DNA from: Octopus vulgaris
Taxonomy: Eukaryota
NCBI GenBank assembly: GCA_951406725.2
Contig: OX597817.1
Span: 117,820,001 to 117,882,000, forward strand
Length of the DNA: 62,000 nt
Direction of reading: 5' to 3'
This document shows, in pieces, positions 1,483-60,977 of this stretch (position 1 is its first letter; each line of letters starts with the position of its first letter). Under the pieces are notes generated by a model. That model had not been told where the DNA came from, ran no database searches, and saw only the letters and a list, made by a program, of their open reading frames with translations. Both the position numbers and the translations under genes were made by a program.

Positions 1483-1514
1483 GATCATAATAATACTAAT
1501 TTAATTTGTATATA

Positions 1515-1606
<92 letters not shown>

Positions 1607-1739
1607 AATAAATGGTGGGGTTGTGTTGACCGCACGTGGAGAAATGATAAGCAAGGAAAAATTGCAAAAATGCAGAATGCTCGATTGAAAGAAAAATTTT
1701 ATGAAATGAGAAAATGAAAAAATATATAAATATATATTT

Positions 1740-1779
1740 ATTCAAACCGGTTTTCGTCATAGTTTGACTTATCAAGAAT
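1740..1779 (-). ncRNA. Minimal type-I hammerhead ribozyme, U3-A8 variant, in PLE copy 1 3' UTR
   Basis: Minus strand ATTC-TTGATAA-GTCA(aacta)TGAC-GAA-AACCGGTT-T-GAAT: 4-bp stem I, 4-bp stem II, palindromic 8-nt stem III. Confidence 0.8.
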
Positions 1780-2454
1780 GAAAAGGTTTTTTAAAAATGA
1801 GAAAGGGGAAAAAAGTTGCATTGTTTTTTGCAAAAGAATAATAATAAATATGTATAAAAATTTTAAAATAAGTACTCCGATACATTGTGAGTTGGTTGTG
1901 TATCTTGAGTTTAATGAATGTTCACGAAAAAATTACCTTGAGGTATTAGGATCCAATGGGATTAAGGCCATGTGTTGTTTGGTTTAATTTAGGATGTTGG
2001 CAAAACAGGAAGTAGTAGTAATTGTGGTTCTTCAGTTCCTGTGTTGTGAATAAGGGGAGACAACTCTTTTGGGTTCTTCAATAAAGGCTGCTGATAAAAT
2101 CCCAAATTATAGAATTGACATTTTAGCTTCATTTGCATTATCTTTTTTATGTAATTGTTTGTTAATTTAACTTTCAGATTTTAACACTTTGTTTATATTA
2201 TTTTCTAATTATATAAATTTGCATAGACAATTGCATTTCAGATTGTTATATCATAAATAATAAAGATGATGGTAATAACAACAATAGTAAAAATGATATT
2301 TAAAGAATATAAGTTTTTGCTGGAAGTGATGAATCTATGGTATCCTTATATATTTGTGTGAGTCCATCCATGAAGAATGAGGTAGAAAAGGGAAGTTTGA
2401 TCAACGAGTAGTTTGTATATTAAGTTCTGTTTGGAATTTTTCAATAAAGATATT

Positions 2455-3468
2455 CTACTTGTTAATTCTCTCCTGTGTGGTGATGCCGTCTTTACATTGG
2501 TAGAAGGGGAATATATAGAATTTGGGGTTTAAGTCTTTAGCGCATGAGTCTATGTGGTCACTCAGTGGAATTTGTCGGTATTCCGGGAGATTTATTTGTT
2601 CTTTATGCACCGCTACCCGTTTACGTAACGGGAGACTCGTTTGTCCAACATAATTATGTTGGCAACCAGCGCATGTGAGAACGTAGATAAGGTTCTCGGA
2701 GGAACAGGAGAAATTAGTCTTGATTTTAAACTTCGTACCTTGTTTGAAGGTAAATTCAGAACTTTCAAGTAGGAGAGGGTATGTCCCACAGTTTGGGCGT
2801 GCACATTTTTTTACTGCTGGGGGTGGATGTGGTGTGTGAAGTTTGGCATTTGTCAAGATTTTTTTTAAAGATTTGTATTGCCTTTTACATTTGAGGATTT
2901 TGTGTGTATTTATAATGTTTTTCATTTTTGGGTCTGTTGACAGTAGACTGAGGTTTTGTATGATTGTGGGGTATGCTTCGATATTTTTGGGGTTGTGGGT
3001 GGAAATGTATGGAAGTATTTTGAGGTTGTGTATGGTGTTAGGTTGGGTAGTTTTCGGTGTAATGTTATCCAGTTCTTTGGCGCGTTTTATTCCATACTCT
3101 ATAACGGTGGAGGGATATTGGCGTTGTAATAGTGTTTTTTTGAGGTCTTGAAGGCGTATTTCTCGTGTATTTGGATCCAAGACGATGGTACATACCCTTT
3201 TAGCCAAATTGAAAGGGATATTTGTCTTGGTGTGTTTTGGGTGGCATGAACTAAAGAGGAGGTATTGTTGTGAGTCTGTGGGTTTGTGGTAGATGTCTGT
3301 TATGATTTGGTTCTTAGGTGCTTTTATAATTAGGAGATCAAGGAATGGTAGATGATGTTTGCTTAATTCCATAGTGAATTGGATGTTGGGATGTATGTTG
3401 TTTAGTAAGGTTTTGAATTCCAGGAGTTTTTCATAAGGTTCTTTCCATATGATGAAACAATAATCCAA
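2455..3468 (-). pseudogene. PLE RT C-terminal half + thumb + GIY-YIG endonuclease (337 aa open frame)
   Basis: IQFTME, LPFLDLLI, TDIYHKPTDSQQYL (PLE RT 6/7/thumb); CARPNCGT Cys motif; LIYVLTCAGCQHNYVGQT (GIY-YIG with CxxC); VH...DH completing CCHH. Catalytic YLDD is mutated to YLDY just upstream and there is a premature TAA near the C-terminus. Confidence 0.9.
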
Positions 3469-3550
3469 ATACCTTTTCCAGTTTTCCTTTATGTAGGTGT
3501 GGAAAACATGTCCAAATTTCTGGCGTGATATTTCATAGAGTATATATAGA

Positions 3551-3614
<64 letters not shown>

Positions 3615-3616
<2 letters not shown>

Positions 3617-3673
3617 TTTTACTCCTTATTCCTTTTTGCAGTCATTTGACTGCGGCTATCCTGGTGCACCACC
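3615..3673 (-). mobile_element. 3' tail fragment of SINE family 1
   Basis: Matches the cagtcatttgactgcggc end of the full copies at 11535 and 21580. Confidence 0.6.
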
Positions 3674-4518
3674 TGTATGTTAATATACATACGCGTGTGT
3701 GTGTGTACACACGCATATGAGACGAACCTGAATTAACGAATTATTTTCAATACTCTAATTATATTCAAAGCATGGTAAATCCATTTTATAATCACTGTTC
3801 TTAAGAAATATGTGTTAATAAATATATGAATATTTATGATATTTATGATACAGTATATGAATTAATAGCTACAAAAGCTGTAACCAAACCAAATAGTAAT
3901 CTTGATCACTACCTTAACGTGGAGGTTCTGTTAAACCACAACCTACTGTGTACATTAGCATGGGAGTATCTCACAGAACTCTTGGTAATTCCTAGTTGTT
4001 AATGTCACTCGCAATTATATAACTGCCATACGTGAATCATCTCCTTCGACCCTGGAACTGCCAGCTCACAAGATTTCACCCTGCTATATATTTCTTAGAG
4101 GGAGATCTCCAGCAGTACAAAGACACCTGAGTGTCCAGTCCGAGAAATATAGAATCTCATTCTCTATTTAGGTACTGGTGTCGCAAATACCCAAAATGTT
4201 TATTGACATATAATTAATACCGATAGAAATAACATTGATTTGTAATGTAATCCAGATCTCCAAATTACGATGGAGGTTTTGTACGAACACAGAATACTGT
4301 GTTATTTACCACAAGAATAATTTACATTTGTACCCATGGTGTAAAAAGCACTTGTTATTATATGGTTGATAGACGAGAATTGTCTGTATTATATTAAATA
4401 CTTTCAATACACTGGTAAATATCTAATTCAGAATGATTCAATGATGCTTATATGTTATATGCAAGGAATGCATACATACAATTCACACTTGTATACATAT
4501 ACATATACATACACATAA

Positions 4519-4572
<54 letters not shown>

Positions 4573-4578
<6 letters not shown>

Positions 4579-4690
4579 ATCACGTGACCGACCAGACCAT
4601 TAGATGTTGCTACACATCGCTGGTCACAATGCGTTCGCATTGTTTTAGCCTTCAAATAACTTCACCCCGCTGGCTAAGCAAGCAGGCCAT
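4573..4690. repeat. Short interspersed repeat fragment between (TA)n tracts (probable LINE/SINE tail)
   Basis: GC-richer 115-nt island starting at cacgtgaccgacc, embedded in microsatellite. Family assignment is recollection only. Confidence 0.35.
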
Positions 4691-4713
4691 ATATATATAT
4701 AAATATATATATG

Positions 4714-4786
<73 letters not shown>

Positions 4787-5374
4787 AATTACTCATGGAT
4801 GAATGGGATTGACAATATTAATTTTATTAAATTGTTTGCAATCCTTTTAACTATTCACATTTGAAATAGTCTTGCGTCATGTCTATCGACGGCAATTATG
4901 CCTTTAATCATATACACTACGAATATCAGCTGGGATTAAATCAAAACAGCGGAACAAAATAATATGCACACTAATTCGACAATTTCGCTAATACACAGTA
5001 TACTCATCACCTTTCAAAAGTGCGCAGTTCTAAATAATATCTCTGTACGAATGGAAACTTAGGCAAAAAAGGTAAAAGAATATAGAAGAAAAATATGATG
5101 ACATTCTGTTCCATTCCACCTTCGTTACTTCGTTCTTAATTATATCCCCAACTGCGCTGTCGTCCATAAATGAAGTGGCTGGATGTCTCCGTGTGATAAG
5201 GACTGTCATGTTATCGTTGTTATGTATTGTCACCAGAACAACGGGCTTAACCTCTCAACCTCACAATTTTCACAATTATTCAGAGCAATTTACACACGCG
5301 TACGTTATTAGATACATGTGCATATATTGGGATAAGTATATGTATGCATATACACACATTTGTATATGTATGTG

Positions 5375-5444
<70 letters not shown>

Positions 5445-6155
5445 ATACTTAGGGTTCAGTAAAGATTTGCTTTACCGCATACCGAACCCTAATTATTAAA
5501 TATTACGTAAGTTTACCATGAAATGGTCCCTTTTACATGCCGAATTCTACTTGGTGAAATTATTGATTACTTCTTAATTAATTAATTTTACCCTTTGTTA
5601 TATGTAGATATATATATATATATACTGGGGCAACTCAGAAATAATGCAGTTTTTTCAATTGCTTTCATCAAAAGTCGGAGGAGACGGGATAAACTATATG
5701 TATCAACTTGCTATAAAAGCAGGTAGTAATTTTACCTAATACTTGTTCTTAGTGCTGAAGGGTACATTTCCAGTGTGATCCTGACTGAACATCCTTGTAT
5801 ATAATTTATTTTTGAAATTTTGATTTTTGATTTAAGATCTTCTTCGATCTCACGTAATACGATTTTAAACCTATCATCATTGATTAGAAAAAAGTGTTAG
5901 TCGAAAGGACCAATGAAAAGGAAGCAATTTCAAATGTGTATCTGTTAGTGTAAATTTCATATTTTATACATACACTCTTTATTTTGTTCCATTTTCAATT
6001 TAAACTGTCCGACGAACGGGAACGTGAAATTCTGTGCAGCAGTTTATTGCGAATTTTCTTCTATGTTTTTGCAGCTTTAATAATAATAATAAAGCATATT
6101 ACTCTACCTCCGGTATAGGAGTCCTTGTTTCACATTTGCTTACGTTTGTGTGTGC

Positions 6156-6189
<34 letters not shown>

Positions 6190-6196
<7 letters not shown>

Positions 6197-6370
6197 ATCC
6201 AAACAAGAAAGCATAAAAAAACACAACAACGCGAGGACGTAACAGATATAGTATTATTAGAGGCTCAGGAAAGAAAGAAAGAAGGAGGGTTTAAGGTTTC
6301 GACCGGAACTCTTAGTCGGAAGCATAGGAAAAGGAAAGATCCAGAGAAGGGAAGACACAGGAAATACATA
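6190..6370 (-). mobile_element. Short non-coding HHR-bearing repeat (family A), decayed copy
   Basis: Colinear with 16125-16330 (aatccaaa.aagaaagca...aaggaaagatccagagaagggaagaca); flanked by (TA)n. HHR core degraded (CCGACTA, ACCT) at 6289-6323. Confidence 0.8.
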
Positions 6371-6393: not shown

Positions 6394-6443
<50 letters not shown>

Positions 6444-6458
6444 TTATTATATAGAAGG

Positions 6459-6509
6459 AGCTTCTACAGGACTAGTACTGTTTCATTCAAGAGAAATCTT
6501 CAGGAAGCT
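6459..6509 (-). ncRNA. Type-I hammerhead ribozyme, mirror copy in the left palindrome arm
   Basis: Exact reverse complement of 6506-6556. Confidence 0.75.
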
Positions 6510-6556
6510 TCCTGAAGATTTCTCTTGAATGAAACAGTACTAGTCCTGTAGAAGCT
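6506..6556 (+). ncRNA. Type-I hammerhead ribozyme with canonical core, right palindrome arm
   Basis: AGCTTC-CTGAAGA-tTTC(tctt)GAAt-GAA-ACAG(tactagtc)CTGT-A-GAAGCT: 6-bp stem I, 3-bp stem II above a U.U mismatch, 4-bp stem III, GUA cleavage triplet ending at 6550. Confidence 0.78.
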
Positions 6557-6639
6557 CCTTCTATATAATAAATTAATTTTACTCTGCTATGTATTGAGTA
6601 CCTTACTTACTGTGGTTAACCCCGAATCAACCCGGGACC

Positions 6640-6679
<40 letters not shown>

Positions 6680-8560
6680 TATGCAGACATAAATATACAT
6701 ATATATATACGCACATATATATATACACACATATACACAGATATATATGTATGTGCGCCAGCGCGTGTGTTATAAATACGAAATTCTCTCTGTTTGGGAG
6801 CCCGGTATTTCAGTCTAAATTTGCTTTAGATAGACATATACCTTCAAGATGATTTCAGGATTGCCCCTCATTTTTATTCTTGAACATCTAGCATTGGAAT
6901 CTAATTTTAAAGCATTTGAGTTACTATTTAGCCCACCGTAGGAGTCAACTCAAAAGTCTGCACGGAGTGCGGTATGTATGCGTGTAAGTGTGTGTGTGTG
7001 TGCATATTTATATATATATTTATATATATAGATGTGTATGCGCATGTTTGTAACCATGCGTGTGTGCATGAGTATCTGCATCAGAAATGGAAGGCTTTTG
7101 ATCTGCTTAGAATAAAAACTTCGCTGCAAATGATAGTCGATATAAATTTGTGTTAACACTGATTTGTATATTATAAATATACTTATTACATTTCTATTTG
7201 TACGCTTTTGTATTATATTTACTCTTGATATTCTACTGATTACTGATGAAAAGAATATATCATTATGATTAAATCTGTAAAAATACTACTTCAATCAAAT
7301 CAATATTACATTTACAGAGGTCACCTAATTGAATGTTAATATGAAATGTCTTCTTATTTGTATATATCAGATATATTTGCATTTAAAATCATTCAAATAA
7401 ACAACACTTAGAAACATGCATATATTTATATATTATATATTAGATAATAAAGCGAATGATTTATACCTTGTAGTTTATTAGTAATGCAAGGTCACTTTCA
7501 TACTGTTCGTTATGTATCTGGTTAATGAAATACGGGAGTTTTTATTAATCACTACAATTGTTTCGAAACCTCTTGCACGCGTGGGATACTTAACAACTGG
7601 AACTGGAGCATCCCACGGTTCAAATGTGTCTCTTCTGTTGATTAGCAGATACAACTTTTTAAAATAACAGTTCCGAAATGTATCTTCTTAGTTCTGTCGA
7701 AGAAAGGCAACAAATTAAAAGATGTTGCTTCATTTATGTAGAAGATCAATAGTAAAATAAAATAGCAGATTTAAAAAAGAAAGCAACACTCAATACAGCG
7801 AAAAACGTTCGTGTTGGAACAATTATTGTAGTATAATAAACTCACGCATCTTTCATCTTCCACCTCAAATTACCCAGATACTATATATACATACTCACGT
7901 GTATATATACGCTCATATATACGTGCTCATCCACGCACATATACAACATATTGAAACAATTAGACGTACACCCTGCCCACAGAATGATGCCTTACAATAT
8001 GTCCTTAGTTCAATAGTCATTCCCTTAAACAGTCATTACTAAGGCTAAAAAATACTAAGTCATTTAATAATATGGTGGATGGTCCTCAACTCTATCTTAC
8101 ATTAATATATTCTCAGAAACATTCGCAGGATTACATGCATGCTCTTTCAGACTTATATATCGTATAAGAAATTTTATGGGCTATATATATTGCAACTTTT
8201 TAATCGTTGAAAAGAATTCATTCAAAAATCATATCTTCAATTATTTATTTGCATTTTCCAATATTATTTTTGGTGGAACGTAATTTATTTTTTATTGTTT
8301 CATATTTATATTAGGTTATTTTGCAAAACATTTATGATATTATAAATTATGATCTTGGCTGAAAAAGAAATGTTTTGACCATTGAAATATATATGACATA
8401 TCTGTCTGGATTTCAACTACTTTCAAATAACTTAAATTTTTTAAAGATTTTTCGCAAGAAAACAACAGTGTTATATTTAAACATACACCAGAAGGTTTAT
8501 TATTTAGCTTGTTCTTTTGTGTCCCTACTCGTAAAGGATCAAATTTTGCACGATGAAATT

Positions 8561-9202
8561 GAGACATCGGATCTTTACTTTTTGACAGGCAGATTTTAAA
8601 TATAATTTTTTGTAACTAAACACTTTCAAACTTCGGACACTGGTAGAATGCGTCATATAAAACATATTTTACTCTTAGCGTTTTGAGAAACCATTATATT
8701 TAGGAGGTTATTTCACGATAAAGTTGTAGTATTTCGGTAATTTCAACCAATGATTGACGTGTATTCAGCTGAATAAAAGTACTGCCGTTGTTTGTCAACG
8801 ATAACTTCCGGCGGTGTATATTTCGTTTGTCAATGTTATTTATGACACCCCTAATCCTAAAACACTAAACCTAACCCTAAAACCTTAAAGCTAAAGTACA
8901 AACGCACGAACAATGTCATAAATAACAGTGTCAAACGAAAAATACACCGCCGATAGTTATTGTTGACAAACAACAATAGTAATTTTATTCAGCTGAACAC
9001 ACGTCATTCATTGGTTGAAATTACCAAAATATGACAACATTAACGTGAAATAACTTCCTAAATATAAGGTTTTCTCAAAATCACTAAGAGTAAAAGATGT
9101 TTTTATGACACAATCTGACAGTGTCCGAAGTTTGAAAGTGCTTAGTTACAAAAAATTATTTTTAAATTCTATCTGTCAAAAGGTAACGATCCACGATATC
9201 TT
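8561..9202. mobile_element. Foldback/MITE-like element with ~285-bp imperfect inverted arms and a telomere-like spacer
   Basis: 8561-8847 is the reverse complement of 8914-9202 (e.g. cactttcaaacttcggacactg / cagtgtccgaagtttgaaagtg). Centre has ccctaatcctaa...cctaaccctaa. No ORF. Confidence 0.9.
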
Positions 9203-11010: not shown

Positions 11011-11534
11011 GCAACAATATTAATATATTTCAGCTTTAAAACCATTCTTACGTTCATAACCAATTGAATCCTCCTGAGAGAGTCCTTATGACGTGTGTTT
11101 GACTCTTCTTTATAGCACAAACTCCATTTTAAGAACAACTGTTTTTAAAACTAAATACTATAAAATTATATCCCAAATTCGGACTACATAAATACTGCAC
11201 GGTAAAGTACACACTAAGAAAACTTATTAAAAAATTGTTCATGAGTCCAGAGATGATTGTATGCGCGTGGACACATACAAACTTACACATACATAAACAC
11301 ACGCGTACACACACACATATTGAATATACTTGTAAAATAGGGATGCGTCTTATTCGAGAATGAGTCATATACATTTGCATCTATGTTTATTGTAGCTATG
11401 TCGGGTTCAAGAATAAAACTGAAGCCGTTTAACGATCTATAGTTTTTGCCTTGATGAGACAATATATATAAAGATACATTGTACATCAACTGTGAATAGA
11501 ATGTAAAGCTAGTTGAACAACATTATTTGATATT

Positions 11535-11741
11535 ACTCTTTTAATTGTTTCAGTCATTTGAGTGTGGCCATGGTGGAGTACTGCCTTTAGTCGAGCGAAT
11601 CGACCCCAGGACACATTCTTTGTAAGTCTAGTACTTATCGGTCTCTTTTGTCGAACTACTAGATTACGGGGGCGTAAAAACACCACCATCGGTTGTCAAG
11701 CAATGTTGGGGGGACAAACACAAACACATAAACACATACAC

Positions 11742-11799
<58 letters not shown>

Positions 11800-11981
11800 A
11801 TATGTATATATATATACACGACGGACTCAATGGGCTTCTTTCAGTTTCCGTCTACCAAATCCGCTCACAAGGCTTTGGTCGGCCCGAGGCTATAGTAAAA
11901 GAGACTAACCCAAGGTGTCACGCAGTGGGGATGAACCCGGAACCATGTAGTTGGTAAGCAAGCTACTTACCACACAGCCAC
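11535..11981 (-). mobile_element. tRNA-derived SINE family 1, full length
   Basis: Minus-strand head GTGGCTGTGTGG (A-box-like) and GGTTCATCC (B-box-like); internal (CA)/(TA) microsatellite; colinear with 12138-12561 and 21580-21986. Confidence 0.9.
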
Positions 11982-12137: not shown

Positions 12138-12357
12138 TCTTTTACTCTTTTACTTGCTTCAGTCTTTTTACTTCGGCCGTACTGGAGTACCACCTTTAGT
12201 CCAGGAAATCGACCCCAGGACTTATTCTTTGTAAGCCTAGTACTTATTCTATCGGTCTCTTTTGCCGAACCGCTAAGTTACGGGGACGTAAACACACCAG
12301 CATCGGTTGTCAAGCGATGTTAGGTTTGGGGCAAACACAGACACACAAACATAAACA

Positions 12358-12405
<48 letters not shown>

Positions 12406-12561
12406 TATGACGGGCTTTTTTCAGTTTCCGTCTACCAAATCCACTCACAACGCTTTAATCGGCCCGATGCTATAGCAGAAGACACTTGCCCAAGTTGCCA
12501 CGTAGTGGGACTGATCCCGGAATCATGTGGTTCGTAAGCAAGCTACTTACAACAAAGCCAC
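12138..12561 (-). mobile_element. tRNA-derived SINE family 1, full length
   Basis: Same body as the neighbouring copy, same orientation, ~160 bp apart. Confidence 0.9.
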
Positions 12562-16124: not shown

Positions 16125-16330
16125 AAGTTAATCCAAATAAGAAAGCACAAAACACACAACAACGCGAGGACGTGGAACAAATATAGTATTATTGGACGCT
16201 CAGGAAAGTAGGAAGGAAGGAGGGTTTAACGTTTCGAGTGGAGCTCTTCGTCGGAAACATAGGAAAAGGAAAGATCCAGAGAAGGGAAGACAAAGGAAAT
16301 AATCGCCAACGGTACACATGCGGTCACATT
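16125..16330 (-). mobile_element. Short non-coding HHR-bearing repeat (family A), better-preserved copy
   Basis: Colinear with 6190-6370, between two (TA)n tracts, contains the HHR at 16224-16258. Confidence 0.8.
16224..16258 (-). ncRNA. Minimal type-I hammerhead ribozyme, U4C core variant
   Basis: Minus strand GTTT-CCGACGA-A-GAG(ctcca)CTC-GAA-ACGT-T-AAAC: 4-bp stem I, 3-bp stem II, palindromic ACGT stem III, GUU triplet. Confidence 0.75.
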
Positions 16331-16332
16331 TA

Positions 16333-16409
<77 letters not shown>

Positions 16410-16622
16410 GAGAGAGAGAGATAGATAAATGTGACAGCGTGTGTACCGTGTGTACCGCGTGTGTACCGAAAGGGATTATATCACCAACTTCAAATGCGAG
16501 CCTAGCCTTTTTTTGGCTTTCCTAAAATCCATAAAAACAAATACATCACCGAAGCCTGCAAACTCTCTTCTGGCATCCACATCAACATCAAAACACCGGA
16601 GGACCTAAAACTAAGGCCCATC

Positions 16623-17762
16623 GTGGCTGGAACCTCCTGTGAAACACACCGCCTGACTAATTTCCTAGACATCCTTTTGCAACCTTTCCTTACCCACATC
16701 AAATGTTTCATTAGGGATGATCTGGACATGCTCAAACACCTCCCGAAAACAGTTAATGAGGAGGCGCTCCTGGTATCCTTTGATGTCATCAACCTCTACA
16801 CCAACATCCCACATGAATATGGTATTGAGGCAATTGATTTCTGGCTAGAAAAACACCCAGAGACATTCCCTGACCGCATTCACAAGACCTTTATTACGGA
16901 CTCACTCAAGTTCATTCTGACTAACAATTATTTCCTCTTCGACAACACACACTACCGTCAAAACTCTGGTATTGCGATGGGTACCAAGGCTGCACCAGTC
17001 CTTGCGAACCTCGTAATGGGTTTCTTCGAACTATCACTCTATGAGATATCACGCCAGAAATTTGGACATGTTTTCCACACCTACCTAATGGAAAACTGGA
17101 AAAGGTATTTGGATGATTGTTTCATCATATGGAAAGAACCTTATGAAAAACTTCTGGAATTCAACACCATACTGAACAACATACATCCCAACATCCAATT
17201 CACTATGGAATTAAGCAAACATCATCTTCCTTTCCTTGACCTCCTAATTATAAAAACACCTAAGAACCAAATCAAAACAGACATCTACCACAAACCTACA
17301 GACTCACACCAATACCTCCTCTTTAGTTCATGCCACCCAAAACACACCAAGACAAATATCCCTTTCAACTTAGCTAAAAGGGTATGCACCGTTGTCTCTG
17401 ATCCAAAAACTCAAGAAATACGCCTTCAAGACCTCAAAAAAAAAACACTATTACAACGCCAATATCCCTCCACCCTTATAGAACATGGAATAAAACGCGC
17501 CAAAGAACTAGACAACATTACACTGAAAACCACCCAAGCCAACACCACACACAACCCCAAAATACTTCCATACATTTCCACCCACAACCCTAAAAATATC
17601 GAAGCATACACCACAATCATACAAAACATCAGTCTACTGTCAACAGACCCAAAAATGAAAAACATTATAAATACACACAAAATCCTCAAATGTAAAAGGC
17701 AACACAAATCTTTAAAAAAACTCTTGACAAATGCCAAACTTCACACACCACACCACCCCTAG
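16623..17762 (+). pseudogene. PLE reverse transcriptase (379 aa open segment)
   Basis: LVSFDVINLYTNIP, YRQNSGIAMGTKAAPVLANLVM, WKRYLDDCF, IQFTME, LPFLDLLI, TDIYHKPTDSHQYL. A 1-nt deletion relative to copy 1 near 17755 breaks the frame before the EN. Confidence 0.95.
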
Positions 17763-18178
17763 CAGTTAAAAAATGTGCACGCCCAAACTGTGGCACCTGC
17801 CCCTTCCTACTTGAAGGCTCTGAATTTAACTTCAAATAAGGAACGAAGTTTAAAATCAAGACCAACTTCTCCTGTTCCTCCGAGAACCTTATCTACGTTC
17901 TCACATGAGCTGGTTGCCAACATAATTATGTTGGACAAACGAGCCTCCCGTTACGTAAACGAGTAGCGGTGCATAAAGAACAAATAAACCTCCCGGAATA
18001 CCGGCAAATCCCACTGAGTGACCACATAGACTCATGCGCTAAAGACAAAAATCCCAAATTCTACACATTCCCCTTCTACCAATGTAAAGACGGAATCACC
18101 ACACAGGAGAGAATTAAGAAGGAGAATCTCTTTATTGAAAAATTCAAAACGCATCTTAATATGCAAACTCCTCGTTGA
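17760..18178 (+). pseudogene. PLE GIY-YIG endonuclease, disrupted
   Basis: KKCARPNCGTCPFLL...NLIYVLT*AGCQHNYVGQT...VHKEQI...DHIDSC; stops at 17837-17839 (TAA) and 17906-17908 (TGA). Confidence 0.9.
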
Positions 18179-18857
18179 TCATACTTCTTCTTTTTTCTAC
18201 CACATTCTCCATGGATGGACTAACACAAATATATAAGGATACCATGCAGTCATCACCTCAAGCTAAAACTTATATTCTTTAAATATCATTATTATTACTG
18301 TTGTTATTATTATTATTTTTTATTATATATGACATAAGAATCTGAAATGTAATTATAAATTGGTTTATGCAAATTTATATAATTAGAAAACAATATGAAT
18401 AAAGTGTTAAAATCAGAATGTTAAGTTAACAAACAAATTATATAAAAAAGATAATGCAAATGAAGCTAAAATGATAATTTTATAATTTAAGTTTTATCAA
18501 CACCCTTTATTACAAAAAATTGATAAACACAAATTGAAGAGCTTAAAACCCATAGAGTTGTCTCCCCTTATTCACAACACAGGAACGGGACTACCACTAC
18601 TTCCTGTTTTGCCAGGCACTTAAGAGACACTCTTAATTAAATTAAACAACACATGGATTTAATCCCATTGGATCTCAATGCTTCAAGGTAATATTTTCGT
18701 GAACAATCATTAAACTCAAGATACACAAAGACCTTATAATGTATCGGAGTACCTAATTTTTAGTGTTTGTATATATTTATTTTTATTTCTCTGCAAAAAA
18801 CAATTTAATTTTCTTTTTTCCCCCTCCTCACATTTAAAAAAAAAATCTTTTCTTTAC

Positions 18858-18899
18858 AATTCTTGAAAAGTCACATTATGACGAAAACCGGTTTGAATT
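18858..18899 (+). ncRNA. Minimal type-I hammerhead ribozyme, U3-A8 variant, in PLE copy 2 3' UTR
   Basis: AATTC-TTGAAAA-GTCA(catta)TGAC-GAA-AACCGGTT-T-GAATT: 5-bp stem I, 4-bp stem II, palindromic stem III; predicted cut after 18894; sense to the RT ORF. Confidence 0.82.
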
Positions 18900-19053
18900 A
18901 ATATATATATATATTTTATAAAATTTTTCAAAAACGTTTCCATACACCCATTTTCATTAAAATTTTCTTTCAATTTAGCATTCTGCCTTTTTACAATTTT
19001 TCCTTGCTTATCATTTCTCCACGTGCGGTCAACACAACCCCATCATTTATTGA

Positions 19054-19126
<73 letters not shown>

Positions 19127-19128
19127 GA

Positions 19129-19163
<35 letters not shown>

Positions 19164-21579: not shown

Positions 21580-21986
21580 ACTCTTTACTCTTTACTCTTT
21601 ACTTGTTTCAGTCCTTTGACTGCGGCCAGGCTGGAGCGCCGCCTTTAGTCGAGCAAATCGACCCCGGGACTTATTCTTTGGAAGCCTAGTACTTATTCTA
21701 TCGGTCTCTTTTGCCGAACCGCTAAGTGAAGGGGACGCAAACACACCAGCATCGGTTGTCAAGCAATGCTAGAGGACAAACTCAGACAAACATGTACACA
21801 CACATGCATATATATATACATAGGACAGGCTCCTTTCAGTTTCCGTCTACCAAATCCACTCACAAGGCTTTGGTCGTCACGAGGCTATAGAAGAAAACAC
21901 TTGCCCAAGATGCCACGCAGTGGGACTGAACCCGGAACCATGTGGCTGGTTAGCAAGCTACATACTACACAGCCACTCCTGCGCCT
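21580..21986 (-). mobile_element. tRNA-derived SINE family 1, full length
   Basis: B-box-like GGTTCAGTCC on the minus strand; body matches the 11.5 and 12.1 kb copies. Confidence 0.9.
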
Positions 21987-26812: not shown

Positions 26813-27066
26813 AATATTACTGTAGGATTCATTTTCCCATGGACAAAATACTTGGTGGCATTTCACGTTCAAATACCGGTAAGGTCAAGTTTGCCTCCCA
26901 GCTATTCGGAGTTGATAAAATGAGTGTCATTTCAGCACTTTATCGATGTGCACAACGTCTCCTTCCTCTCAAACTTGCTGGTCTTGTGCGAACATTTGTA
27001 ATCATCATCATCATAAACATTTTACTTCGCTGAACCCATGATTATACTTGTTCCGATTAATTCTTT

Positions 27067-27390
27067 AAGACCGGAAAGCAGCTTATTGTCAAAGGGCTAA
27101 AAGTATCTTTCCAAGATACATAGCATCCAAGTGTCTATCTCAAAGTTCTCGTTATCCTCAACAGAGCAATTTTCTGAGCATTTTCTTCCCCCATGTCACT
27201 TTCCAATTTCCATTATACTTGCTTCAAATAATTCATTAAGACAGGACAGCAAATTATTATCGAAGGGCTAAAAGTATCTCTTTCCAAGATATTTACCATC
27301 AAGGTACCAATCTCAAAATTTTCGTTATCCCCAAAAGAGCAATTTTCTTAGTATATTCTTCTTTCATGTCAATTACAATTTCTCCGACTC
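27067..27390 (+). repeat. Two-copy tandem duplication, unit ~171 bp, diverged
   Basis: aagggctaaaagtatct...ccaagata...tctcaaa.tt.tcgttatcc...agagcaattttct occurs twice, units starting ~27067 and ~27238. Confidence 0.85.
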
Positions 27391-29394: not shown

Positions 29395-29560
29395 TTCACG
29401 GTCTCGTGCAGCTGTTTGAACATCTAGATACCTGTGCAAATGGGAAATTTAAAATATTAAAATTTTACAAAAATGAAAACTATAAAAAGTTCCAACTACG
29501 AAAGATAAAAGAAGAATACTTTATAAGAATTCTAAATTCGAAATTAAACACGAAATATCT
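29395..29560 (+). mobile_element. PLE GIY-YIG C-terminal remnant (different family)
   Basis: LFEHLDTCANGKFKILKFYK...LRKIKEEYFIRILNSKLN parallels LSDHIDSCAKD...FPFYQ...RIKKENLFIEKFKTHLN of the large PLE. Confidence 0.75.
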
Positions 29561-37686: not shown

Positions 37687-38570
37687 CCTTAATTCCGATT
37701 TTCATACATTCATTAATTAGCGCTCGACGGATTTTGTAAACTTGCTCATTTAATTTCTTTCCCTCCTTATATAATACGTACTGAGATCTCATCACATTCT
37801 GTCTCTATTTAACATCCTGTTTTTTTTTTTTTACTTCATATGTAGCTAACCTAATCTCTGTAGCTCGAAAATAATTGTCATCGAAAGATGACCATCAGTA
37901 ATATAATACTTAGGAAAAATGTATAAAATAAATTACTGAATCTGATTGTGACGCTCAATGATGCTTATTGCACCCACATCCAAAGAGAGAGTATAAAGAA
38001 GGTATTAGTATTCTTATTATTATTATTATCGCCATTATTTTATTATTATTATATTGCATTATTATTATTATTAGTATTATATTATTATTATTACGTAACA
38101 TTTTTATAGCGTTTTTTCACTACCGAGCGCAGCTTTATCATGTATGTGCTGATTTGTTTGATGCTCTGATGGATATTGTATGGAAAGTGACGTAGGAATG
38201 TGCAGTGCCTTAATTCCGATTTTTATTCATTCAGTAATTAGTCCTCGACGGATTTTGTATGTATTTGTCTGAATTTTTTTTATCCTCCTTATGCATATAA
38301 TACGTACTTAGATCTCAGGTTCACATTCTGTCTCTATTTAACATCCTTTGTTTTTTACTTCATATGTAGCTAACCTAATCTCTAGCTCGAAAATAATTGT
38401 CATGGAAAGATGACCATCAGTAATGATAATACTTAGGAAAAAATGTATAAAATAAATTACTGAAACTGATTGTGACGCTCAATGATGCTTATTGCACCCA
38501 CATCCAAAGAGAAGGTATAAAGAAGGTATTATTATTGTTATTATTATTATTATTATTATCATTATTATTA
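37687..38570 (+). repeat. Tandem duplication, period ~521 bp
   Basis: ccttaattccgatttt...cacattctgtctctatttaacatcct...gacgctcaatgatgcttattgcacccacatccaaagag present at 37687 and 38208. Confidence 0.93.

Positions 38571-60261: not shown

Positions 60262-60977
<716 letters not shown>

What the first reader, a model, noticed from the sequence alone, without database searches (positions are those of the whole stretch)
6442..6573. Perfect 132-bp palindrome encoding one hammerhead ribozyme on each strand
Seen: a zero-mismatch, zero-spacer palindrome. Each arm holds a complete canonical-core HHR (+6506-6556, -6459-6509), and the two overlap at the AAGCTT centre, which is part of stem I of both. Predicted cuts lie after 6550 (+) and 6465 (-). 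The right arm continues into unique element sequence (to ~6642) while the left arm stops at (TA)n, consistent with a foldback/template switch nucleated in the self-complementary stem-I sequence. Inference: a transcript from either strand can fold as a 66-bp perfect hairpin (Dicer/ADAR substrate, ribozyme off) or as an HHR (cleavage), i.e. a potential conformational switch. Ribozymes in both polarities recall viroid-like ambisense replicons, though here they arise by inversion. Spacerless palindromes are cruciform-prone, so perfect identity implies a very recent event or ongoing conversion.
Basis: partly seen in the sequence, partly recalled or inferred. Interest (0 to 1): 0.9.

Follow-up and report, generated by a model that had tools for sequence, protein, structure and literature searches.

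The report
Young palindrome carrying mirrored hammerhead-like motif
A perfect 132-bp inverted duplication sits inside a TA microsatellite in an invertebrate genome and carries one hammerhead-ribozyme-like motif plus its mirror image; it is most likely the snapped-back end of a small Penelope-type retroelement fragment, not a ribozyme switch.

Summary
The palindrome is real in the sequence. Positions 6442-6573 are 66+66 bp with no mismatch and no spacer. The motif at 6506-6556 (+) has every hammerhead core nucleotide, a 6-bp helix I and a near-palindromic helix III. The motif at 6509-6459 (-) is its mirror copy, so there is one motif, not two. Its helix II is only three A-U/G-C pairs closed by a U.U mismatch. 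No Rfam hammerhead model matches it, and no second copy could be found anywhere, so covariation cannot be tested. A motif this good is expected about 6.5e-4 times per window by chance.

The window is dense in simple repeats and holds two truncated Penelope-like elements (PLEs). Each carries its own PLE-style minimal hammerhead and is bounded by (TA)n, as the 201-bp unit is. PLE insertions are known to target microsatellites, to be 5'-truncated, and to carry an inverted copy at the 5' end.

The best reading is a very young snap-back at the 5' end of a short PLE-type fragment. The proposed hairpin/ribozyme switch fails: the hairpin is about 77 kcal/mol more stable, and the ribozyme fold has an equilibrium fraction near 1e-55. 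The viroid analogy is not supported. An assembly artefact is not excluded.

The parts
6394..6441 (.). Left (TA)n tract that the unit abuts
   Evidence: Sequence and Tandem Repeats Finder rows 6394-6453
6442..6507 (.). Left arm: inverted copy of 6508-6573
   Evidence: Perfect reverse complement of the right arm; inverted repeat I1
6503..6512 (.). Palindrome centre GGAAGCTTCC. It contains the self-complementary AAGCTT where the strand switch or junction lies.
   Evidence: Read from the sequence
6508..6573 (+). Right arm: first 66 bp of the 135-bp unique unit
6506..6556 (+). Hammerhead-like type-I motif. Helix I 6506-6511/6551-6556; core 6512-6518; helix II 6520-6522/6527-6529 with U.U at 6519/6530; GAAA 6531-6534; helix III 6534-6537/6546-6549; predicted cut after A6550.
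   Evidence: Descriptor scans. MFE of the isolated 51-mer is a three-way junction at -8.5 kcal/mol, z = -0.17. No Rfam hammerhead hit.
6459..6509 (-). Mirror image of the same motif on the minus strand; predicted cut after 6465
   Evidence: identical sequence by symmetry
6574..6642 (+). Unique 69-bp continuation of the right arm (putative 3' part of the inserted unit). It has no counterpart on the left.
   Evidence: No other copy in the window and none in the external collections.
6643..6752 (.). Right (TA)n / (TA/CA)n tract that the unit abuts
   Evidence: Tandem Repeats Finder rows 6640-6752; sequence

Best explanation
The 201-bp unit 6442-6642 is a discrete insertion lodged in a (TA)n microsatellite. 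Its 135-bp body (6508-6642) is most likely a heavily 5'-truncated copy of the hammerhead-bearing 3' region (pseudo-LTR) of a Penelope-like element, or of a non-autonomous element mobilised by one. The 66-bp left arm was made in the same event. At the 5' truncation point the nascent cDNA either snapped back on itself, or two cDNAs primed on opposite target strands annealed through the self-complementary AAGCTT. The first 66 nt were copied in reverse, which gives a spacerless perfect palindrome. The 'two ribozymes' are therefore one PLE-style type-I hammerhead motif and its mirror. In this context neither can fold: any transcript spanning both arms becomes a 66-bp perfect hairpin, at most a dsRNA or small-RNA substrate. 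The palindrome, the motif geometry, the (TA)n embedding and the energetics are shown. The retroelement origin, the mechanism of the inversion and any ribozyme activity are inferred.
For: 1. The palindrome is perfect and spacerless, and its centre is a self-complementary hexamer, as a switch primed by palindromic microhomology predicts.
2. The unit is bounded on both sides by (TA)n. The same holds for both truncated PLE copies in this window: A 1509-3541 (-) and B about 16480-19155 (+).
3. Published PLE biology fits. Insertions are strongly 5'-truncated, often have an inverted 5'-truncated copy directly at the 5' end, show microsatellite/(TA)n insertion bias, and carry HHRs in the pLTR (PMC8557442). 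A PLE protein cleaves and extends both target strands in vitro and has two RT start sites, which explains one-sided 'tails' (PMC11167929). Paired min-HHRs on opposite strands 100-700 bp apart were seen in Schistosoma (PMC4209133).
4. PLE B in this window has a 25-nt inverted repeat (2 mismatches) across the (TA)n at its 5' junction, 16310-16334 / 16424-16448.
5. Under a first-order Markov null, the motif's core plus three helices is expected about 6.5e-4 times per 62-kb window (1 hit in 191 Mb).
6. Helix III is a near-palindromic 16-mer (7 of 8 pairs, CUAG tetraloop). Palindromic helix III is a hallmark of metazoan type-I and PLE HHRs.
7. PLE relatives fetched here carry HHRs of the same layout, two with the same CUGAAGA core (L004 5078-5119, L005 1449-1489; also L002 3010-3048). 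Helix I covaries fully between lineages.
8. A U.U at the base of helix II occurs in the self-cleaving axolotl HHR_Amex2 family (PMC7229834).
Against: 1. No sequence similarity links 6508-6642 to either PLE copy in the window or to eight fetched PLE loci.
2. No second copy of the unit was found anywhere, so it is not shown to be a repeat family and no covariation test is possible.
3. A classical inverted 5'-truncated PLE copy should keep the element's 3' end, whereas the left arm lacks the 69-bp extension. That fits a snap-back better than two independent cDNAs.
4. [quoted passage not shown]
5. Helix II is three weak pairs, and AAGA of the core pairs with the UCUU loop in the MFE fold.
6. No Rfam hammerhead model matches.
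7. Two nucleotides of helix I (6506-6507) belong to the left arm, so part of helix I may have been created by the inversion itself.
Confidence: 0.45

Rival explanations
1. A DNA-level fold-back with no retroelement involved. A stalled fork or break in the hairpin-prone (TA)n tract led to an intra- or inter-strand template switch at the short palindrome AAGCTT. This inverted and duplicated 66 bp of ordinary local sequence. The hammerhead resemblance is then a coincidence.
For: Fold-back structures are common in this window, and three of four touch simple repeats: 16310-16448 around (TA)n, 60334-60977 around (TAA)n/(TTA)n, and 8569-9192. The unit has no detectable repeat family. The motif has a weak helix II, is not the favoured fold, and is unseen by Rfam. 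The relaxed form of the descriptor has about 0.026 chance hits per window, which means hundreds per gigabase.
Against: A motif as good as this one is expected only about 6.5e-4 times per window. It also has a near-palindromic helix III and the CUGAAGA core found in related PLE HHRs. It lies in a window that holds two PLE-type minimal hammerhead-like motifs. The 201-bp unit is cleanly bounded by (TA)n on both sides, like the PLE fragments nearby.
Confidence: 0.25
2. An assembly or sequencing artefact. A chimeric fold-back read, or a mis-join in a region flanked by self-complementary (TA)n, introduced a false 66-bp inverted copy.
For: Perfect identity and zero spacer are what an artefact gives. 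Spacerless palindromes are unstable in vivo. (TA)n flanks are hard to assemble, and PLE tandem/inverted structures are reported to cause assembly problems (PMC8557442).
Against: The palindrome is internal. Unique, non-palindromic sequence continues on both sides. The arm is far shorter than typical long-read fold-back chimeras. Older, diverged inverted repeats of similar build exist nearby, so such structures are real in this genome.
Confidence: 0.1
3. A palindromic non-autonomous DNA transposon (MITE-like) or a hairpin-RNA/miRNA-like gene whose function is the hairpin itself.
For: A perfect 66-bp stem would be a Dicer substrate. Rfam miRNA-precursor models give generic sub-threshold hits (mir-3199 64.6 bits against a gathering score of 100; MIR8001 43.3 against 90). 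The flanks are TA-rich, as at TA target sites.
Against: All miRNA hits are below the gathering scores and reflect only hairpin shape. No other copy exists in the window or in the collections. There are no recognisable terminal inverted repeat ends or target-site duplication. The asymmetric 69-bp extension is not explained.
Confidence: 0.07
4. One reading: a bistable RNA that toggles between a 66-bp hairpin (ribozyme off) and an active hammerhead on either strand, akin to ambisense viroid-like replicons.
For: The core nucleotides are complete on both strands.
Against: The hairpin ensemble is about 77 kcal/mol more stable, and the HHR-competent fraction is about 6e-55. Co-transcriptional zipping starts at the centre. 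The minus-strand motif is a mirror copy produced by DNA inversion. There is no tandem or circular organisation.
Confidence: 0.03

Closest known systems
Penelope-like element (PLE) insertion architecture: 5'-truncated copy with an adjacent inverted 5'-truncated copy, microsatellite target, HHR in the pseudo-LTR (PMC8557442; PMC4209133; PMC11167929)
   Same: The unit is embedded in (TA)n. It has a head-to-head inverted structure at the 5' end and a one-sided extension. It carries a hammerhead-type motif close to the 3' end. Motifs on opposite strands have been reported for truncated PLEs. Real PLE fragments with the same (TA)n boundaries lie in the same window.
   Different: There is no RT/GIY-YIG coding sequence. 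There is no sequence similarity to any PLE examined. The inverted copy lacks the 3' end, so it looks like a snap-back rather than a second insertion. There is zero spacer, so the two motifs overlap in helix I, an arrangement not described in the papers read here.
Metazoan type-I hammerhead ribozymes and PLE minimal HHRs (Cervera and de la Pena 2014; 2020)
   Same: CUGANGA...GAAA...UH core, helix I of 6 bp, helix II of nominal 4 bp, and a near-palindromic helix III. A U.U at the base of helix II also occurs in axolotl HHR_Amex2. The CUGAAGA core is shared with PLE HHRs in L004 and L005.
   Different: There is no G10.1-C11.1 pair and no extra nucleotide after A9. Helix III is longer (4 bp plus an 8-nt loop) than the usual 1-2 bp. 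H17 is A rather than the U seen in related PLE motifs. No family and no covariation are available. The motif is not detected by Rfam models. The HHR fold is a minor conformer.
Non-LTR retrozymes (tandem 170-400 bp repeats with type-I HHRs, proposed non-autonomous PLE derivatives; PMC7229834; bioRxiv 10.64898/2026.07.22.740005)
   Same: Short, AT-rich, non-coding unit with a type-I HHR-like motif in a PLE-bearing invertebrate genome.
   Different: The unit is not tandemly repeated. Only 135 bp is unique. The fold of 6508-6642 is not unusually stable (z = -1.2), so it is not rod-like.
Fold-back inversions / quasipalindrome template switching at short inverted repeats (replication or repair; general knowledge)
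   Same: A perfect inverted duplication centred on a short pre-existing palindrome, next to a hairpin-prone repeat.
   Different: That mechanism needs no mobile element and does not predict a ribozyme motif or clean (TA)n boundaries on both sides.

Membership tests
Hammerhead ribozyme (type I) | Conserved core C3 U4 G5 A6 N7 G8 A9 / G12 A13 A14 / A15.1-U16.1 / H17 not G | tested here: met
   CUGAAGA 6512-6518, GAAA 6531-6534, U6549, A6550
Hammerhead ribozyme (type I) | Three helices around the core, including a stable helix II with the usually conserved G10.1-C11.1 pair | tested here: not met
   Helix I has 6 bp and helix III has 4 bp. Helix II has only U-A, U-A and C-G, closed by U6519.U6530. 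The literature lists G10.1-C11.1 as highly conserved, although a self-cleaving family with a U.U base exists.
Hammerhead ribozyme (type I) | Match to the curated covariance models (Rfam Hammerhead_1, _3, _II, HH9, HH10) | tested here: not met
   No hammerhead hit at the gathering threshold, at E<=10 on 601 nt, or on 67 nt. Caveat: the PLE min-HHR-like motif at 18858-18899 is also missed.
Hammerhead ribozyme (type I) | The HHR secondary structure is an accessible, favoured fold of the transcript | tested here: not met
   The HHR-competent fraction is 2.5% in the isolated 51-mer, 1e-4 in the right arm plus extension, and 6e-55 with both arms
Hammerhead ribozyme (type I) | A family of copies with compensatory changes in the helices | not testable with these tools
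   No other copy in the window, metagenome, genome or viral collections, the protein-word search or the literature. The source genome is not searchable here.
Hammerhead ribozyme (type I) | Site-specific self-cleavage | not testable with these tools
   Needs in vitro transcription
Penelope-like element insertion | RT plus GIY-YIG ORF, or sequence homology to a PLE pseudo-LTR | tested here: not met
   There is no coding similarity in 3614-6144 or 6442-6760. There is no nucleotide similarity of the unit to PLE A or B or to loci L002-L008.
Penelope-like element insertion | 5' truncation with an inverted copy directly at the 5' end | tested here: met
   Left arm 6442-6507 is the inverted copy of 6508-6573 with zero spacer. 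The feature is described in PMC8557442. The inverted copy lacks the 3' end.
Penelope-like element insertion | Microsatellite, especially (TA)n, target | tested here: met
   (TA)n lies directly on both sides, as for PLE copies A and B
Non-LTR retrozyme | Tandem repeats of 170-400 bp, each with a type-I HHR | tested here: not met
   Tandem Repeats Finder shows no tandem array of the unit, and there is a single copy in the window
Viroid-like ambisense replicon | Circular RNA with distinct ribozymes in each polarity | tested here: not met
   The minus-strand motif is the exact mirror produced by the DNA palindrome. There is no repeat or circular signature.
miRNA / hairpin-RNA gene | Match to a curated precursor family, or small-RNA evidence | tested here: not met
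   Only sub-threshold generic hairpin hits were found (mir-3199 64.6 against 100 bits, and others). Expression is not testable here.

The most novel reading that the evidence does not exclude
The locus may be a frozen joint of PLE retrotransposition. Under this reading, cDNAs primed on both target strands (or one cDNA snapping back) were joined through a self-complementary hexamer inside the ribozyme's helix I. The result is a spacerless palindrome. When transcribed it would yield a perfect hairpin whose small RNAs target the ribozyme-bearing pseudo-LTR of its own family, that is, a self-made silencing trigger.
Probability: 0.1. Interest if true: 0.55.

Novelty: new member of a known kind. Interest (0 to 1): 0.3.

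Why it matters
If the retroelement reading is right, the locus is a clean, very young example of how Penelope-type insertions create inverted 5' copies. The junction is preserved to the nucleotide at a self-complementary hexamer. That mechanism is still undefined, and the papers read here call for in vitro work on it. The locus also shows how a ribozyme motif can be silenced structurally by its own inverted copy. If the motif is instead a coincidence in an ordinary fold-back, the lesson is methodological: a complete hammerhead core with weak helices needs family-level covariation or a cleavage assay before it is called a ribozyme. Under either reading it is not a new kind of system.

Tried and rejected
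1. Rfam at the gathering threshold on the whole window, then at E<=10 on 601 nt and on 67 nt. No hammerhead family appeared, only generic miRNA-hairpin hits.

2. Search for other copies of the arm or extension.
- BLAST within the window found none.
- A metagenome pattern scan gave one hit whose flanks are unrelated, so it is a chance match.
- Two genome-contig scans and one viral scan found none.
- Full-text sequence strings in the paper library found none.
- A protein-word search with the open frame over the extension found none.

3. Similarity of the unit to PLE copies A and B and to PLE loci L002-L008: none.

4. A possible tRNA/SINE-core resemblance of 6574-6642 (minus strand) to the SINE-like inverted pair at 60.3-60.9 kb. 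The local alignment score was 29 against a shuffle mean of 22.7 (sd 3.8), which is not significant. The idea was dropped. ARAGORN finds no tRNA.

5. A hammerhead reading of the 170-bp repeat (6190-6362 / 16127-16315) was examined by eye and rejected. It lacks G5 and has no helix I.

6. An alternative cut after GUC 6545 with a 2-bp helix III was rejected because position 1.1/2.1 would be a C.C mismatch.

7. A covariance model built from the five PLE HHRs was abandoned. MAFFT could not align the core and GAAA consistently.

8. Hairpin-forming DNA transposase footprints, Helitron 3' hairpins and Foldback elements were considered and rejected on arm length and structure.

9. The supplement of PMC4209133 is not held as text.

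Full report
OBSERVATION

Positions 6442-6573 are their own reverse complement: 132 bp, 66+66, with no mismatch and no spacer, centred on GGAAGCTTCC. With one mismatch the arms reach 70 nt, 6438-6577. As RNA the stretch is a single hairpin of -109.4 kcal/mol, z = -25.7. As DNA each strand folds at -71.5 kcal/mol.

The left arm abuts a (TA)n tract (6394-6441). The right arm runs on into 69 bp of unique sequence (6574-6642) and then into (TA)n (6643-6752).

- helix I AGCUUC/GAAGCU, 6 bp
- core CUGAAGA
- helix II UUC/GAA with loop UCUU
- GAAA
- helix III ACAG/CUGU
- GUA, with cuts after 6550 (+) and 6465 (-)

First, the pair that closes helix II (10.1-11.1) is U.U instead of the usual G-C. Second, the minus-strand motif is simply the mirror of the plus-strand one.

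IS THE MOTIF MORE THAN CHANCE?

I scanned 191 Mb of first-order Markov sequence with the window's dinucleotide make-up. The relaxed descriptor gives 0.026 hits per 62-kb window on both strands. A motif at least as good as this one (helix I >=6, II >=3, III >=4) gives about 6.5e-4 per window. In addition, the 16 nt of helix III (ACAGUACUAGUCCUGU) are palindromic in 7 of 8 pairs with a CUAG tetraloop. That is the style of metazoan type-I and PLE hammerheads (PMC4209133).

Several results count against it:
- No Rfam hammerhead model matches at the gathering threshold, or at E<=10 on 601 nt or 67 nt.
- The isolated 51-mer is no more stable than shuffles (z = -0.17).
- In the MFE fold the core's AAGA pairs with the UCUU loop.
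- The HHR-competent secondary structure accounts for only 2.5% of the ensemble of the isolated motif, and 1e-4 of the right arm plus extension.

The Rfam negative is weakened because Rfam also misses the PLE minimal hammerhead-like motif in this window. The U.U is not disqualifying either: the self-cleaving axolotl HHR_Amex2 family has a U.U at the base of helix II (PMC7229834).

CONTEXT

The window is eukaryotic and 33% G+C. It has 63 (TA)n tracts of six units or more, and 8% of it is perfect simple repeats.

It holds two truncated copies of a Penelope-like element (RT plus C-terminal GIY-YIG). Copy A is at 1509-3541 (-) and copy B at about 16480-19155 (+), 86% identical over 2.1 kb. The best named protein relatives are molluscan (oyster, octopus, mussel) at about 50-58% identity, and the best unnamed ones reach 58-67%. 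Both copies are bounded by (TA)n at both ends.

About 700-750 nt downstream of its ORF, each copy carries a minimal hammerhead-like motif with the U3-A8 core variant, G10.1-C11.1 and an 8-nt palindromic helix III AACCGGUU:
- B 18858-18899 (+)
- A 1779-1740 (-)

The three differences between the two copies fall on N7 and loop 2.

Related PLE loci fetched by protein identity carry motifs of the same layout. In L002 and L004 the motif lies downstream of the ORF; in L005 it lies upstream of the PLE ORF:
- L002 3010-3048: CGCUAA-CUGACGA-...-GAAA-CCGG-UU-UUAGCG
- L004 5078-5119: AUUCUGU-CUGAAGA-...-GAAA-GCGC-UU-ACAGAAU
- L005 1449-1489: CUGAAGA core

Helix I is completely different in sequence between lineages yet always complementary. 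Hammerhead-like motifs of the PLE type are therefore present in this window, and they give a picture of what they look like in this lineage.

WHAT THE PALINDROME MOST LIKELY IS

The literature read here describes PLE insertions as follows:
- They are strongly 5'-truncated.
- They often carry an inverted 5'-truncated copy directly at the 5' end.
- They carry an optional one-sided 'tail'.
- They are biased towards microsatellites, including (TA)n.
- They hold HHRs in the pseudo-LTR (PMC8557442).

A purified PLE protein cleaves and extends both target strands and starts reverse transcription at two sites (PMC11167929). Pairs of min-HHRs on opposite strands 100-700 bp apart were reported in Schistosoma and attributed to truncated PLEs (PMC4209133).

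The 201-bp unit here has the same outline. It is an island in (TA)n with an inverted copy at the 5' end of a 135-bp body. A hammerhead-type motif lies near the 3' end, and one side has an extension. PLE B in the same window also has a 25-nt inverted repeat (two mismatches) across the (TA)n at its 5' junction.

I therefore favour a single retro-insertion event. At the truncation point the cDNA snapped back, or two cDNAs annealed through the self-complementary AAGCTT, and 66 nt were copied in reverse. The centre being a palindromic hexamer is what such a microhomology-primed switch predicts.

This is an inference, for four reasons:
- The unit has no sequence similarity to any PLE examined.
- No second copy could be found in any collection open to me.
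- The left arm lacks the 3' extension that an independent inverted insertion would keep.
- Two nucleotides of helix I come from the left arm.

RIVALS

A DNA-level fold-back at the hairpin-prone (TA)n, with a coincidental motif, is the main rival. Four fold-back structures occur in this 62-kb window, and three touch simple repeats.

An assembly artefact cannot be excluded without reads. However, the palindrome is internal, unique sequence continues on both sides, and older diverged inverted repeats nearby show that such structures are real in this genome.

A MITE or miRNA-like hairpin gene has only generic, sub-threshold support.

FUNCTION

The proposed hairpin/ribozyme switch is not supported. 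With the HHR pairs enforced and the core unpaired, the ensemble energy of the 132-mer is -32.9 against -109.8 kcal/mol, a fraction of about 6e-55. The same fraction is obtained with longer flanks. The hairpin nucleates at the centre as soon as the second arm is transcribed.

A transcript across both arms is a 66-bp perfect duplex and, at most, a substrate for dsRNA pathways. Only a transcript that starts at or after the centre could fold as a hammerhead, and then poorly.

The viroid analogy fails because the second polarity is a mirror made by DNA inversion.

AGE

Zero mismatches in 66 pairs bounds arm divergence below 4.4% at 95%. The other inverted repeats in the window are 7-18% diverged, and at those divergences the probability of zero mismatches is 8e-3 to 2e-6. 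The event is the youngest such structure here, or the arms are being homogenised, or it is an artefact.

VERDICT

The thing is best filed as a new example of a known kind: a PLE-style head-to-head insertion or fold-back carrying hammerhead-type motifs on opposite strands. Its unusual feature is the zero-spacer overlap. Membership in the hammerhead family is unproven: the core is met, but the helix II/G10.1-C11.1 test, the curated-model test and the fold test are not met, and covariation and cleavage are untestable here. Interest is modest.

Noticed in passing
window 18858-18899 (+) and 1779-1740 (-); loci L002 3010-3048, L004 5078-5119, L005 1449-1489: The two truncated Penelope-like elements each carry a minimal hammerhead-like motif with the U3-A8 core covariation, G10.1-C11.1 and an 8-nt palindromic helix III (AACCGGUU). 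Related PLEs from ENA contigs have motifs of the same layout with C3-G8 cores and fully covarying helix I. Rfam does not detect them.
   Followed up: partly
window 1509-3541 (-) and about 16480-19155 (+); fragment 29421-29549: Two 5'-truncated copies of one PLE family (RT plus C-terminal GIY-YIG, 86% identical), both bounded by (TA)n tracts. The closest named relatives are molluscan proteins at about 50-58% identity. A small GIY-YIG-like fragment lies at 29.4 kb.
   Followed up: partly
window 6190-6362 and 16127-16315: A repeat of about 170 bp (81% identical, same orientation) is flanked by (TG)n(TA)n on the left and (TA)n on the right in both copies. One copy lies just left of the palindrome and the other just upstream of PLE copy B. 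Its nature is unknown. It has no hammerhead.
   Followed up: partly
window 16310-16334 / 16424-16448: A 25-nt inverted repeat (2 mismatches) brackets the (TA)n(GA)n tract at the 5' junction of PLE copy B. It is followed by three tandem GTGTGTACCG units before PLE coding similarity begins.
   Followed up: partly
window 8569-9192: A fold-back of about 620 bp (82% self-complementary, arms of about 280 bp) whose centre is a degenerate telomere-like CCTAA/CCCTAA run. It may be a MITE or Foldback-type element.
   Followed up: no
window 60334-60977: Two inverted copies (93% complementary, 253-nt arms) of a SINE-like element of about 190 bp, separated by (TTA)n and flanked by (TAA)n. The element has a B-box-like GTTTTCAAATCC and a TTCGGGGTCAAC...GAGTACC core.
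   Followed up: no
window 11533-11981, 12142-12561, 21591-21976; 37687-38048 / 38208-38570; 27041-27382: Further uncharacterised repeat families: a 420-450-bp repeat in three copies (72-79%), a 362-bp direct repeat pair (87%), and a 173-bp two-copy tandem (80%). None has a hammerhead motif under my descriptors.
   Followed up: no
whole window: Simple-repeat density is extreme. There are 63 (TA)n tracts of at least 6 units in 62 kb, plus long (TAA)n, (TTC)n, (TAC)n, (GTA)n and (CAT)n arrays. Transposable-element fragment boundaries tend to coincide with (TA)n.
   Followed up: partly
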